IMG/VR virus record: IMGVR_UViG_3300038465_000091
Location: 1-64,000 of that record
Reading direction: 5' to 3' (one strand)
Length of the DNA: 64,000 nt
Shown here: positions 15,300 to 62,158 of the stretch, piece after piece
Numbering within the stretch: position 1 is the stretch's first letter
Layout: each line of letters starts with the position of its first letter
The notes under the pieces: generated by a model
Database searches by the model: none
Told to the model about the DNA's origin: nothing
What the model saw: the letters and a program-made list of their open reading frames with translations, nothing else
Position numbers and translations under genes: made by a program

Positions 15300-16160
15300 T
15301 CAAAATGCTATTGGGACCTAGCTGCGACTGGCTACGCAGGGTCGTCGGCTCCCGCCGAAGGTCTTGCCTATCAAGCGTCCCAACAGCAATCTTCGCCCCC
15401 ACTGTTCTCGCGGTATTACCGTCCGATTGGATACGGAAGCGTTGCCCCAATTCTTGGGTTACCCGTTCAGGGGGAGCACCCACCCATCAATCTCAAAACT
15501 ATGCGGGCACGAGCTTGGTTAGGCTCCGACCTTCTGCCGTAGTTGCAACGGCCTCCCGATCTTGCTTAGTCGCCGCACAAACTTTCCCAGTCGGCAGGGA
15601 CTCCCGATTCTCCACCCTGCATGACCCCAGTCCCATTTAAGGGACACAGTTGAGCCTGTGCTCGAAGACTGTGCTGACCGCTTGGGTCTCCACGTTCGGA
15701 ATCCCGTCGCAGCGGGAACCCCTTCCAAACGCTTTAGCGTCTCTATTTCTGGATCGTGTCTATTTCCGCCACGACTGGAAAAACGATTGTGGCGGGGGAT
15801 AGCAGCCGTAAAACACGGCCCCACTAGGCTCACGCCCACGTTCTTTTGGTAAATCTCCCTTGAAGAACGATTGCTCATATCTCGTATCGTAGCTCGAACA
15901 GGAGCAGGACACAGAGACACCGCCACAAAATTACTACTCCCATCCGAGGCAGTTCGAACTGCTTGTCGGCGTCGGCTGTAACCAGCGAACGAGCGATTTG
16001 AGCTTACCTTTCGGCAGAGGCTTGCGGAGTTCGTTAAAAGCGGCCTGAGAAGCGATTTCACAGGTTTCACGCCGCACGCTTTTACGTTATGGCGGTTCCC
16101 CGAACAATGACTCCACTCAGGCACAAAGTCAAAGTCCAATGAGGACCTGCTAATCACAGC
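15300..16160 (-). ncRNA. Candidate large structured ncRNA (GOLLD/ROOL size class)
   Basis: About 850 nt with no credible RBS-linked ORF, many short hairpins, inside a tRNA array; family not verified. Confidence 0.35.
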
Positions 16161-16260
16161 CGCTATTACGCGGCAACCTTACTTGTTGTCAGGCGGCTGT
16201 CGGCTTTGGCCCTGAGGATTTACACAGGAGCGACTCACCTATCATGACCTGACAACAAAA

Positions 16261-16340
16261 TGGTTGCAGAGGCTTGGAGTCGCACCAAGTACACCGTTCG
16301 GCTTATGAGGCCGATGAGCCGCAGTTGCTCGATCCCTGCT
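16261..16340 (-). tRNA. Atypical tRNA-Met(CAT)
   Basis: TCGGC-CTCATAA-GCCGA arm; T-loop TGCGACT; encoded CCA; irregular acceptor stem. Confidence 0.6.
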
Positions 16341-16776: not shown

Positions 16777-16853
<77 letters not shown>

Positions 16854-17967: not shown

Positions 17968-18307
17968 GGCTTTCACTCCCCGACCGCTCACACCTTATGC
18001 GGTATGTGCGGTCTTGCTAGGGTTAGTAGCCATCTGCTCGTCCTCCTGTGAATTGAATTGTCGGGTATCCGATACTGTGTTTGGGCAGTTAGTAGCCAGA
18101 TGCTTTTGGCCCTATAGCCTCGGAAGGGTCCGCAGACTCCCGACTTCCCTAAATTTCGGCGGCGTTTCAGCCGCCAGCACTGCATAACCAAAACCGAGCG
18201 CGGTGCACCGCCTCGGCTGGATATTCAAAGAACGGGTGCGTCTGTTCTGCACAAACTTGTGGGGCTTTCCCCATCCGGCTCGAAGCCTACGGGTCTTAAA
18301 CCTACGC

Positions 18308-18383
18308 TTTAGCGTGGTGGGATTCGAACCCACGTCCTTCCCCGTCAATAGGGGTTGCCGATCCGCTGGGCGTCACGCTAAAG
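18308..18383 (-). tRNA. Degenerate tRNA-like gene (loop TATTGAC, nominal anticodon TTG)
   Basis: Perfect acceptor TAGCGTG/CACGCTA and GTGGG-TTCGAAT-CCCAC T-arm; A33; no encoded CCA. Confidence 0.5.
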
Positions 18384-19176: not shown

Positions 19177-19279
19177 GGCGGTCCTCTGTCTAATAGGTTT
19201 GATATTCACCAAGTGCCTATAGGACGATACTGCTTTCGTTGGAAAAGAGCCGCGAGTTTTCGCAAAAACCACATAAATT

Positions 19280-19354
19280 TGGTCGGGGAGGCGAGATTCG
19301 AACTCGCGATCCCATGCTCCCGAAGCATGTGCGTTACCGCTACGCTACTCCCCG
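19280..19354 (-). tRNA. tRNA-Pro(CGG)
   Basis: CATGC-TTCGGGA-GCATG; CGGGGAG acceptor; CCA. Confidence 0.92.
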
Positions 19355-19358
19355 AAAT

Positions 19359-19531
19359 TGGTTGCAGGGCTGGGAGTCGAATTGAACCCAGCATCTCTCG
19401 GATCGCTGCTCAGCGTCTTGCGTCAACGTTGCTCGTCTATTTCCTTGCGGATCACCGTCTCACATCAACTTGCCAGCGCAACGACCCCGCGCACTTTCGT
19501 GCGGGATGTTCTGCCATTTGAACTACCTGCA
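19359..19531 (-). ncRNA. tRNA-framed RNA with a ~100-nt insert in place of the anticodon arm
   Basis: Acceptor TGCAGG/CCTGCA-A-CCA, D-arm GTTC..GAAC and T-arm GCTGGG/CCCAGC flank a long structured insert. Confidence 0.6.
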
Positions 19532-19565
19532 AACTCTTGCCGCCAGTCTTGCTACACGTGGCGGG

Positions 19566-19769
19566 TTACCCCACCTTACTCGAAAAACTTTTCTTGAACT
19601 CTTCAACGACGACTTCGAGGCTATGTCTTGCTTCCGCCTCATCCGCGCCATAACCTACGAGTTCTGCACCGTTGTGGTGCCCGAACTCGTTGAAGAAGAA
19701 AGGAAGTTCAACCCTCGCTTCATAGCTGTCGTGCTTCTCTTTGCCATCGTTGATGATTTTTGCATCCAT
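19566..19769 (-). CDS. Small protein, possible HicB-like N-terminal fold
   Basis: YEARV...LVGYGADEAEARHSL resembles the HicB G-x-T/D-x-x-EA pattern. Confidence 0.45.
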   Translation of the reverse strand: MDAKIINDGKEKHDSYEARVELPFFFNEFGHHNGAELVGYGADEAEARHSLEVVVEEFKKSFSSKVG

Positions 19770-20026: not shown

Positions 20027-20116
20027 TGGTCAGGATGAGAGGATTTGAACCTCCAAGGTCATAAAGACACCTGCATCCGAGGCAGGACGGCTGCCAAGTT
20101 ACCGTTCTACACCCTG
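20027..20116 (-). tRNA. tRNA-Pro(CGG) with enlarged variable arm
   Basis: CCTGC-CTCGGAT-GCAGG; ~15-nt variable region; CCA. Confidence 0.85.
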
Positions 20117-20129
20117 ACATTGTAAAATT

Positions 20130-20216
20130 TGGTCGGGGTGGGGAGATTCGAACTCCCAGTGATCTTATCTCCCGCTTCCAAAGCGGGTCGGCTCCCAACT
20201 ACCGATTTACACCCCG
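20130..20216 (-). tRNA. tRNA-Pro(TGG) with enlarged variable region
   Basis: CCCGC-TTTGGAA-GCGGG; ~13-nt variable region; CCA. Confidence 0.87.
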
Positions 20217-61734: not shown

Positions 61735-61745
61735 TTAAAATATTC

Positions 61746-62158
61746 GTGTTGAACCTGTAGCCGGGATTTTGTCCGCCAGCTTACGCCAGTTGGACGACCA
61801 TTCCTCTAGGCGTTGCATCGCTACAACGCTCAAGCACCCTACCCGCTGATTACCCGCCTCTTGCGAAGCGAACGGATCGAACACAATCCTGCTCAGCCTA
61901 TTTGGGCTTGCTGCACGTGGAGATTGCTCGTTTCACCCGAACTGAATCGGCTCGTCTCTGTAGCTCTAATCGTCAACACCCTTGCGGGTGCCGCCCAGCC
62001 GTTAGCTGGCACGCTGTTCTTTGCAGTCCCGAACTTCCTCCCCTGCGCTCAACGCCGGACTTGGTTGGGTATTTCACATCAACACTGCCGATGCGAATCT
62101 TACACGCTTCCAAGCACAGGACGTATATCTACGCAGCAGCGGTCGTCCAATTCAACAC
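61746..62158 (-). ncRNA. rnpB: RNase P RNA (bacterial type A-like)
   Basis: P1 GTGTTGAA/TTCAACAC; P2 ACGACCG/TGGTCGT; P4 strands GAGGAAGTTCGGG and ACAAAATCCCGGCTA; GGGTGAAACG and GAGCAA core motifs. Confidence 0.9.

What the first reader, a model, noticed from the sequence alone, without database searches (positions are those of the whole stretch)
19359..19531. tRNA-framed RNA carrying a ~100-nt structured insert
The acceptor (with CCA), D-arm and T-arm are intact, but the T-loop is enlarged (TTCAATTCGACT). The anticodon region is replaced by about 100 nt containing GCAC-GAAA-GTGC and CGTTGC/GCAACG helices. It is shorter than typical tmRNAs or group I introns. It could be a mini-tmRNA-like RNA, an unknown intron, or a tRNA-scaffolded small RNA.
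Basis: seen in the sequence. Interest (0 to 1): 0.62.

Follow-up and report, generated by a model that had tools for sequence, protein, structure and literature searches.

The report
Circularised tRNA-shaped RNA of a peat jumbo phage
A huge phage from peat soil encodes, inside its tRNA gene array, a tRNA-shaped RNA that has no anticodon but carries a 115-base structured filling, and one soil RNA data set holds it as a 176-base head-to-tail joined (circular) molecule, which is unusual for a bacterial virus but rests on thin evidence.

Summary
On the minus strand at 19359-19532 lies a tRNA frame: a 7-bp acceptor stem followed by CCA, a canonical D arm, and a T arm with a 12-nt loop. It sits 4 nt upstream of tRNA-Pro(CGG), in the tRNA array of a partial 223-kb peat/permafrost jumbo-phage record. 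A GAAA-capped hairpin and an 88-nt branched arm replace the anticodon arm.

- **Not a known family.** ARAGORN and Rfam do not recognise it.
- **Not a tmRNA.** It has no G3-U70, and the phage has a normal tmRNA elsewhere.
- **Not an intron-bearing tRNA.** Both RNA-library contigs that cover it keep the filling.
- **Origin.** Its 3' third is homologous to an odd tRNA(CAU) lineage of this phage clade. Two exact 13- and 14-mers of the filling recur, in the same order, in a large non-coding region of a distant relative.
- **New evidence.** One peat metatranscriptome holds a perfectly cyclic 176-nt contig, 19355-19530. One reading of its junction puts both ends at RNase P-type positions.
- **Ligase.** Relatives encode a T4 Rnl1-type RNA ligase. 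The partial record here does not.
- **No covariation.** I found only identical copies, so structure conservation cannot be tested.

Best reading: a tRNA-scaffolded non-decoding RNA, analogous to T4 species 1 RNA, that becomes circularised. Main rival: a chimeric tRNA pseudogene that is still processed.

The parts
19355..19530 (-). 176-nt unit recovered as a cyclic (head-to-tail) contig in metatranscriptome X15. The junction is ambiguous over UUU, so the 5'/3' ends may be G19530/U19355 up to U19533/A19358.
   Evidence: a 206-nt contig runs 19362-19530 and then 19355-19391. 206 = 176 + 30 (k-1 overlap); depth 7.
19526..19532 (-). Acceptor stem, 5' strand (UUGCAGG)
   Evidence: pair probabilities 0.62-1.0
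19508..19523 (-). D arm, GUUC-AAAUGGCA-GAAC, canonical
   Evidence: probability 0.97
19488..19504 (-). Hairpin capped by a GAAA tetraloop, standing where the anticodon arm should be. It has no 7-nt loop and no anticodon.
   Evidence: probability 0.99
19400..19487 (-). 88-nt branched arm closed by a 10-bp helix, in the position of a variable arm
   Evidence: probability 0.78-1.0
19452..19464 (-). Motif UGUGAGACGGUGA, identical in a large non-coding region of relative G006
19427..19440 (-). Motif AUAGACGAGCAACG, identical and in the same order in G006. Between the two motifs the window has the short hairpin UCC-GCAA-GGA; G006 has 62 nt there.
19369..19392 (-). T arm: 6-bp stem with a 12-nt loop, UUCAA + UUCGACU. 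The clade's tRNA(CAU) genes have U(G/U)CGACU, so UUCAA is a 5-nt addition.
19359..19368 (-). Acceptor stem 3' strand (CCUGCAA) followed by CCA
19355..19358 (-). 4-nt spacer AUUU before the next tRNA; retained in the cyclic contig
19280..19354 (-). tRNA-Pro(CGG). Cleavage at its 5' end by RNase P would define the 3' end of the 176-nt unit.
   Evidence: 68.8 bits
19534..19555 (-). Leader GCAAGACUGGCGGCAAGAGUU. It is the last 22 nt of a roughly 150-nt structured RNA that relatives carry at this locus and the window has lost.

Best explanation
This is a real, expressed, phage-encoded tRNA-shaped non-coding RNA. It is not a decoding tRNA, a tmRNA or an intron-bearing tRNA.

**Origin (inferred).** It arose from the clade's unusual tRNA(CAU) lineage. 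It kept the parts that tRNA-processing enzymes read: the acceptor stem with CCA, and the D/T elbow. The anticodon arm was replaced by a GAAA-capped hairpin and an 88-nt arm.

**Processing (position shown, enzymes inferred).** It is transcribed with the tRNA array. RNase P would release it by cutting at its own 5' end and at the 5' end of tRNA-Pro(CGG), 4 nt downstream.

**Circle (shown in one data set; enzyme inferred).** The released 176-nt piece is joined head to tail into a circle. The most likely enzyme is an Rnl1-type 5'-P/3'-OH RNA ligase, as encoded by this phage clade.

**Function (inferred).** The tRNA frame serves as a processing signal and stabilising scaffold, and the arm is the payload. 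A closed acceptor stem cannot be aminoacylated, so the circle would act as an exonuclease-resistant tRNA mimic or as a carrier of the arm, not in decoding.
For: - **Frame and fold:**
- **No anticodon loop;** no call by ARAGORN or Rfam.
- **Placement:** same strand as all 27 tRNAs of the window and 4 nt from tRNA-Pro.
- **Ancestry:** the 3' third is homologous to the clade's tRNA(CAU) family (weakly 107).
- **Presence in RNA libraries:** a linear contig 19219-19575 in X8 and a cyclic 176-nt contig in X15, with no flanking coverage in X15.
- **Circle ends:** in one of the four equally fitting readings of the junction, both ends fall at RNase P-type positions. That reading puts G19530 after a U, and U19355 just before +1 of tRNA-Pro.
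- **No DNA copy of the junction** in IMG/VR.
- **Enzymes:** all four clade genomes tested encode their own RNase P RNA. G005, G006 and G008 encode a T4 Rnl1/gp63-type ligase. In G005 it sits next to a CCA-adding enzyme.
- **Precedent:** T4 rnaC is a 139-nt stable RNA in the T4 tRNA cluster, with a terminal stem and a canonical T arm.
Against: - Only identical copies were found, in IMG/VR, a JGI metagenome contig and Logan runs. So there is no covariation and no sign of purifying selection.
- Relatives whose neighbouring gene is 85-87% identical at protein level lack it at the same site. The covariance model finds it in none of four relatives' records, two of them complete genomes.
- The 5-nt T-loop addition looks like a slippage scar.
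- The circle rests on one assembled contig in one of three RNA runs, not on raw reads.
- The ligase gene is absent from the partial record of this phage.
- No function of the arm is shown.
Confidence: 0.5

Rival explanations
1. Chimeric, decaying tRNA pseudogene. A copy of the tRNA(CAU)-type gene was disrupted by recombination with neighbouring non-coding DNA and by a 5-nt slippage in the T loop. It is still co-transcribed and cut by RNase P because the acceptor/T minihelix survives. The circle is a by-product: an RNA ligase acts on an aberrant RNA whose 3' trailer is not trimmed. No function.
For: - It is an orphan. Only identical copies exist, and it is absent from close and distant relatives.
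- It is a mosaic: its 3' third resembles tRNA(CAU), and its filling shares two short blocks with a G006 non-coding region that itself follows a tRNA(CAU).
- The T loop reads as UUCAA + UUCGACU.
- The locus is highly plastic among relatives.
- The cyclic contig keeps the untrimmed AUUU trailer.
Against: - All frame helices and the tertiary-contact bases (U8, A14, G18G19, U54U55C56, A58) are intact, and the filling folds into a closed 10-bp-based arm rather than a random stretch.
- The RNA is present at depths like those of neighbouring mRNA contigs in two RNA libraries.
Confidence: 0.3
2. The RNA is linear, and the head-to-tail junction is not a circle. It would come from a variant genome with two tandem copies, or from template switching during cDNA synthesis.
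For: - Tandem duplicates of tRNA genes are common in this array.
- The evidence is a Logan contig, not reads, from one run. X8 shows only the linear form.
Against: - X15 has no coverage of either flank. A tandem DNA copy or a primary transcript would show flanks, and RNase P products of a tandem pair would not keep the junction.
- No DNA with the junction exists in IMG/VR, and three independent assemblies hold a single copy.
- At depth 7, the junction words must be in a sizeable share of the molecules to be assembled.
- A second, 41-nt cyclic contig in the same run points to rolling-circle cDNA from small circles.
Confidence: 0.25
3. Intron-containing tRNA. The filling, or 89 nt of it, is an intron, and a mature tRNA such as Leu(GAG) is made by splicing.
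For: ARAGORN at 70-80% of its threshold proposes tRNA-Leu(GAG) with an 89-nt intron. The same phage has a tRNA-Arg with a 318-nt intron called by ARAGORN.
Against: - No group I intron model matches at E <= 10, and about 100 nt is half the size of the smallest group I introns (my own knowledge).
- The proposed anticodon stem has a C-C mismatch and C37. It has no long variable arm, and it uses a distorted T arm.
- Two tRNA-Leu(GAG) genes already exist.
- Both RNA contigs retain the filling.
Confidence: 0.04
4. Miniature tmRNA: a tRNA-like domain plus a short tag-coding stretch. AAAUAGAC-GAG-CAA-CGU-UGA loosely resembles the E. coli resume region.
For: - There is no anticodon, and a CCA end is present.
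- A short open frame follows AUAGAC here (EQR-stop) and in G006 (EQRESS-stop), read directly from the sequences.
Against: - There is no G3-U70, so no alanine identity.
- A full D stem is present, which tmRNA lacks.
- Neither ARAGORN at normal threshold nor Rfam calls a tmRNA.
- The phage has a standard tmRNA with tag AEAPKAFAAHA.
- The circular form has no free CCA.
Confidence: 0.03

Closest known systems
Bacteriophage T4 species 1 RNA (rnaC; NC_000866 70908-71046) and species 2 RNA (rnaD)
   Same: - Small stable RNAs encoded inside a phage tRNA gene cluster, directly after a tRNA.
- rnaC (139 nt) folds with a terminal stem and a canonical T arm, CCGGG-UUCGAAU-CCCGG, and carries long hairpins in place of the D and anticodon arms.
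- Function unknown (my own knowledge).
   Different: - No sequence or model-level homology: R1 scores rnaC at 5.6 bits, E 0.5.
- The element keeps a full D arm, has an enlarged T loop, and sits upstream of a tRNA.
- A circular form is not known for the T4 RNAs (my own knowledge).
Canonical bacterial or phage tRNA (Rfam RF00005)
   Same: Acceptor stem with CCA, D arm, T stem, the UUC and A58 of the T loop, and placement in a tRNA array.
   Different: No anticodon stem-loop; 115 nt between the D and T arms; 12-nt T loop. There is no RF00005 match even at E <= 10, and no ARAGORN call.
tmRNA (standard or two-piece)
   Same: A tRNA-like molecule without an anticodon, with the interior replaced by structured RNA.
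   Different: No G3-U70; a D stem is present; about half the size; no pseudoknot series or credible tag; not detected by the tools. A normal tmRNA is present elsewhere in the phage.
Circular intermediates of permuted tRNA genes (Cyanidioschyzon merolae) and circular archaeal tRNA introns and C/D sRNAs (PMC3978253, PMC9014305)
   Same: tRNA-related RNAs that exist as covalently closed circles. In archaea an ATP-dependent RNA ligase circularises small RNAs (abstract of PMC9014305).
   Different: - Those are eukaryotic or archaeal.
- Their ends are made at bulge-helix-bulge motifs or at C/D sRNA termini.
- The permuted-tRNA circle is reopened to give a working tRNA.
- Here the gene is not permuted, the joint closes the acceptor end, and no reopening is seen.
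Engineered tRNA scaffolds for recombinant RNA (the Ponchon-Dardel approach, as used in PMC3753655)
   Same: A foreign structured RNA replaces the anticodon arm. The tRNA frame gives processing and stability.
   Different: That is an artificial design. This is a natural gene, with an extra hairpin and an enlarged T loop.

Membership tests
tRNA (RF00005 / ARAGORN) | 7-bp acceptor stem with a 3' NCCA end | tested here: met
   UUGCAGG/CCUGCAA followed by CCA. In the register shared with the G005 tRNA(CAU)-like gene it reads U1-A72, A73, CCA.
tRNA (RF00005 / ARAGORN) | D arm with A14, G18G19 and A21 | tested here: met
   GUUC-AAAUGGCA-GAAC at 19508-19523.
tRNA (RF00005 / ARAGORN) | Anticodon arm: 5-bp stem with a 7-nt loop | tested here: not met
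   A 6-bp hairpin with a GAAA tetraloop stands in its place.
tRNA (RF00005 / ARAGORN) | T arm with a 7-nt loop | tested here: not met
   12-nt loop UUCAAUUCGACU.
tRNA (RF00005 / ARAGORN) | Score above the family threshold | tested here: not met
   No RF00005 match at E <= 10. No ARAGORN call at default threshold, with or without intron mode.
tmRNA | G3-U70 alanine identity pair | tested here: not met
   The third pair is G-C or C-G in either register.
tmRNA | Tag reading frame, pseudoknots, and detection by ARAGORN or Rfam | tested here: not met
   No call at normal thresholds. Only a 3-codon frame follows AUAGAC.
Group I intron in a tRNA | Catalytic core (P3-P9) recognised by the Rfam intron model | tested here: not met
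   No match at E <= 10 in 19200-19700.
Group I intron in a tRNA | A spliced product exists | tested here: not met
   Both RNA-library contigs over the element retain the filling. These are contigs only, so a rare spliced form cannot be excluded.
T4 species 1-type tRNA-framed stable RNA | Encoded within a phage tRNA cluster, flanked by tRNA processing sites | tested here: met
T4 species 1-type tRNA-framed stable RNA | Terminal stem plus T arm, with non-tRNA hairpins between | tested here: met
T4 species 1-type tRNA-framed stable RNA | Sequence or structure homology to rnaC | tested here: not met
   R1 scores rnaC at 5.6 bits, E 0.5. It is an analogue, not a relative.
Covalently closed circular RNA | Head-to-tail junction in RNA data without the flanks | tested here: met
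   The cyclic 176-nt contig in X15 has no flank coverage. It is not seen in X8 or X16.
Covalently closed circular RNA | Exonuclease (RNase R) resistance, or a gel shift | not testable with these tools
   Needs bench work.

The most novel reading that the evidence does not exclude
The phage deliberately makes a covalently closed, tRNA-shaped RNA. RNase P, whose RNA the phage encodes itself, cuts a 176-nt unit out of the tRNA array, and a phage Rnl1-type ligase closes it. The result is an exonuclease-proof tRNA mimic without an anticodon or a free CCA end. It would titrate a tRNA-binding factor, for example a host tRNA-targeting defence nuclease, or deliver the 88-nt arm. This would be the first programmed circular tRNA-like RNA in a bacterial virus that I know of.
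Probability: 0.2. Interest if true: 0.85.

Novelty: new variant of a known kind. Interest (0 to 1): 0.6.

Why it matters
Phage tRNA clusters have been known since the 1970s to hold tRNA-framed stable RNAs of unknown function, the T4 species 1 and 2 RNAs.

Here a second, unrelated example appears in a soil jumbo phage. This phage clade also encodes its own RNase P RNA. Relatives add an Rnl1-type ligase, a CCA-adding enzyme and a release-factor-like protein.

If the circular form is real and programmed, it would show two things. Phages would be using tRNA processing sites plus an RNA ligase to make stable circular RNAs. And there would be a natural counterpart of the engineered tRNA scaffold.

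It would also give a concrete substrate for asking what phage RNA ligases do besides anticodon-loop repair.

If it is a pseudogene, it is a clean snapshot of how tRNA arrays generate chimeric RNAs.

Tried and rejected
**Detectors**
- ARAGORN in tRNA, intron, tmRNA and mitochondrial modes on the region, and on the circle and its trimer, gave nothing at normal thresholds.
- Rfam at gathering and at E <= 10 gave nothing on the element.

**Searches for homologues**
- BLAST of the region against 50,697 phage records hit only ordinary tRNAs.
- An IMG/VR pattern scan for the T arm found one identical copy.
- A scan for the 14-mer gave 118 loci. All were chance hits except the same genotype and G006.
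- A gapped two-motif scan in IMG/VR with a 40-70 nt gap gave 0 hits. It even missed G006, so that scan is not exhaustive.
- The two-motif scan of JGI metagenomes gave 20 loci, 19 of them coding or chance and one identical copy.
- The covariance model R1 found no structural homologue in G005-G008 or in 11 loci.
- A two-motif hit in G008 turned out to be the start of a small ORF.
- A search for the closest parent tRNA by local alignment to 141 tRNAs gave only generic similarity.

**Enzymes and neighbours**
- RNA ligase in this phage's record: none found (TIGR02307, TIGR02308, the G005 Rnl1 protein and the G005 203-aa ligase-like ORF).
- RtcB in the clade: none.
- PHROG annotation of neighbouring ORFs P0001 and P0002 gave nothing.
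- The promoter and terminator scan showed nothing above chance, apart from a terminator-like hairpin after tRNA-Pro.

**Considered and dropped**
- Hammerhead-like ends: CUGAGCA does not fit CUGAUGA.
- A canonical GAAA tetraloop receptor: absent.
- Rolling-circle translation: stop codons in the sequence.

Full report
**Context.** The window is the first 64 kb of a 223.5-kb linear IMG/VR virus record that CheckV estimates as 71% complete.
- It encodes a DNA polymerase, a portal protein, a helicase and a UvsX-like recombinase.
- The window holds 27 tRNA genes, all on the minus strand, and a class A RNase P RNA.
- The whole record adds a tmRNA, a tRNA-Arg with a 318-nt intron, and a CUA suppressor tRNA.
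- Relatives found through the polymerase include two complete genomes of 455 and 463 kb.
- The closest cultured phage is Tunturiibacter phage Tunturi_5, with 44.9% polymerase identity.
- Runs that hold the DNA are peat and permafrost metagenomes.

**The observation.** On the minus strand, 19359-19532 reads as a tRNA frame:
- an acceptor stem, UUGCAGG/CCUGCAA, followed by CCA;
- the U8-A9 linker;
- a canonical D arm, GUUC-AAAUGGCA-GAAC;
- a 6-bp T stem whose loop begins UUCAA, as a T loop should, but runs to 12 nt.

Between the D and T arms lie 115 nt. They fold into a 6-bp hairpin capped by GAAA, followed by an 88-nt branched arm closed by a 10-bp helix. All of these helices have pair probabilities of 0.78-1.0, apart from the outermost acceptor pair (0.62).

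The shape is that of a long-variable-arm tRNA whose anticodon loop has been sealed by a tetraloop. The gene ends 4 nt before tRNA-Pro(CGG).

**What it is not.**
- ARAGORN does not call it in any mode at normal threshold, and Rfam has no match at E <= 10.
- It is not a tmRNA. It has no G3-U70, it has a D stem, and the phage has a regular tmRNA.
- The only intron model is tRNA-Leu(GAG) with an 89-nt intron, found at 70-80% of threshold. That model has a mismatched anticodon stem, C37 and no long variable arm. Both RNA-library contigs that cover the element keep the filling.

**Relatives and origin.** I found identical copies in a second IMG/VR contig and in a 13-kb JGI contig. I found no diverged copy.

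Phages whose neighbouring gene is 85-87% identical at protein level (L003, L004) and a third relative with 92% polymerase identity (L009) carry something different at this site. It is a roughly 150-nt structured RNA with four compensatory pairs among the three sequences. The window keeps only its last 22 nt. That remnant ends in AGAGUUU, which in L003 and L004 directly precedes tRNA-Pro. So the 176 nt are extra DNA relative to those relatives.

The covariance model R1 finds no counterpart in four relatives' records, two of them complete genomes, or in 11 loci.

The 3' third of the element aligns with an unusual tRNA(CAU) lineage of the clade. Its members are window 16265-16339, G005 (L010 1434-1508) and G006 (L012 6742-6819). 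They share a T loop of U(G/U)CGACU and, in the window and G005 copies, a GCAACCA end (GCACCCA in G006). In G005 that gene also sits directly before a tRNA-Pro.

The element's T loop therefore reads as a 5-nt addition, UUCAA, in front of UUCGACU.

Two exact blocks of the filling, 13 and 14 nt, recur in the same order in a large non-coding region of G006. That region directly follows G006's tRNA(CAU) gene. By my rough estimate, a chance co-occurrence is of the order of 0.003. I infer a mosaic origin from these neighbours.

**RNA evidence.** These are Logan contigs, not raw reads.
- In metatranscriptome X8, a 357-nt contig covers 19219-19575 linearly. This is either a precursor or contaminating DNA.
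- In X15, a 206-nt contig at depth 7 runs 19362-19530 and then 19355-19391. Its first and last 30 nt are identical, which is what a k=31 assembler prints for a closed cycle of 176 nt.
- X15 has no coverage of either flank, and its coverage of the phage is patchy. That argues for a processed RNA rather than DNA or a primary transcript.
- The joint is CCAA-UUU-GCAGG and is ambiguous over the three U. In one reading the 3' end is U19355, exactly what RNase P leaves when it cuts tRNA-Pro at C19354. The 5' end is then G19530, following a U.
- The junction does not occur as DNA in IMG/VR.
- A second cyclic contig in the same run measures 41 nt. It runs from nucleotide 38 of tRNA-Gln to 2 nt past the discriminator, plus CC. 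It fits rolling-circle cDNA from small RNA circles.
- The strand, the exact ends and the abundance cannot be read from contigs. The reads tool was limited to one call.

**Enzymes.**
- All four clade genomes tested carry an RNase P RNA.
- G005, G006 and G008 carry a T4 Rnl1/gp63-type RNA ligase (TIGR02308, E 1e-17 to 1e-23; PHROG 562, E 2e-57). In G005 it sits next to a CCA-adding enzyme.
- G005 also has a release-factor-like ORF and a weak ligase-like ORF inside its tRNA-Pro array.
- The ligase is not in this phage's partial record. By synteny with G005, it would lie beyond the record's left end. That is inference.
- No RtcB was found in the clade.
- RNase P leaves 5'-phosphate and 3'-hydroxyl ends, the substrate of Rnl1-type ligases (established enzymology).

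**Interpretation.** I read the element as a tRNA-scaffolded, non-decoding RNA. RNase P would cut it out of the array at two sites, and it is then closed into a circle. It is analogous to T4 species 1 RNA, which also combines a terminal stem and a T arm with long hairpins, but it is not homologous to it.

The main rival is a young chimeric pseudogene that is still processed, with circularisation as a side reaction. The lack of any diverged copy keeps that rival strong.

The function of the arm is unknown. A closed acceptor end excludes aminoacylation of the circular form.

**Scores.**
- Confidence in the best explanation: 0.5.
- The circle itself: about 0.7.
- Novelty: a new variant of a known kind.

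Noticed in passing
window 61741-62086 (-); also G005:92128-92502, G006:305811-306131, G008:31609-31959: The phage encodes its own class A RNase P RNA (139 bits here, 167-208 bits in relatives), embedded in a tRNA array. It is conserved in all four clade genomes tested. One full-text literature search turned up no report of phage-encoded RNase P RNA.
   Followed up: partly
window 18306-18344 (-), in tRNA-Gln(UUG) 18308-18381: Metatranscriptome X15 holds a 71-nt contig that is a 41-nt cycle. It runs from tRNA-Gln nucleotide 38 to 2 nt past the discriminator, plus a non-templated CC. It may be a circularised 3' tRNA half, which would mean anticodon-loop cleavage followed by ligase action. A variant gene is not excluded.
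   Followed up: no
window 16265-16339 (-); L010 1434-1508; L012 6742-6819: A clade-specific odd tRNA(CAU). Its T loop is UGCGACU or UUCGACU, and its 3' end is GCAACCA, with an extra A before CCA in the window copy. Rfam misses the window copy and ARAGORN misses the G005 copy.
   Followed up: partly
window 16030-16260 (-); L012 6820-7600 (G006): A conserved non-coding stretch follows the tRNA(CAU) gene, with blocks 90-94% identical to G006. In G006 it is part of a roughly 780-nt ORF-free, structured region between tRNA-Met and tRNA-Phe that matches no Rfam family.
   Followed up: partly
L003 5665-5822, L004 5666-5823, L009 3121-3266: A roughly 150-nt structured RNA lies upstream of the AGAGUUU leader in relatives. 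It has GCAA- and GGCA-capped hairpins and four compensatory base-pair changes among three sequences, and matches no Rfam family. The window keeps only its last 22 nt (19534-19555).
   Followed up: partly
L004 5403-5468; L003 4937-5001: A roughly 65-nt mini tRNA-like RNA lies between tRNA-Pro(GGG) and tRNA-Pro(UGG). It has a 6-bp terminal stem and a tetraloop hairpin with compensatory changes between the two phages. Its T-like arm has a 13-nt loop, UUCAGAAUUCUCU, that contains the palindrome GAAUUC.
   Followed up: no
window 20028-20116 (-) and 20130-20216 (-): An 87-nt tRNA-Pro(UGG) with a 13-nt variable region. Next to it is an uncalled Pro(CGG)-like tRNA with an expanded D region. ARAGORN does call its counterpart in L003 (4223-4312, 90 nt).
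   Followed up: no
G000 record 123104-123446, 127942-128353, 129385-129460 (outside the window): A tmRNA with tag AEAPKAFAAHA, a tRNA-Arg(UCG) with a 318-nt intron, and a tRNA with anticodon CUA that would read UAG. The last hints at possible stop-codon recoding. I did not examine it.
   Followed up: no
L010 1605-2261 and 2261-2872 (G005); L178 1339-2508 and 2727-3704: The relative G005 carries several RNA-handling genes. Inside its tRNA-Pro array are a release-factor-like ORF with a GGQ motif (closest models RF1 and PrfH) and a 203-aa weak RNA-ligase-like ORF. Elsewhere it has a T4 gp63/Rnl1-type ligase next to a CCA-adding enzyme.
   Followed up: partly
window 19362 (loose end of an X15 contig): Another X15 contig matches the element's 3' part up to 19362. 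In RNA sense it then continues as ACCUUUGAC followed by the start of a tRNA-Met like the one at 16853. A related strain may therefore carry this 3' end in a different neighbourhood. I could not retrieve the sequence.
   Followed up: no
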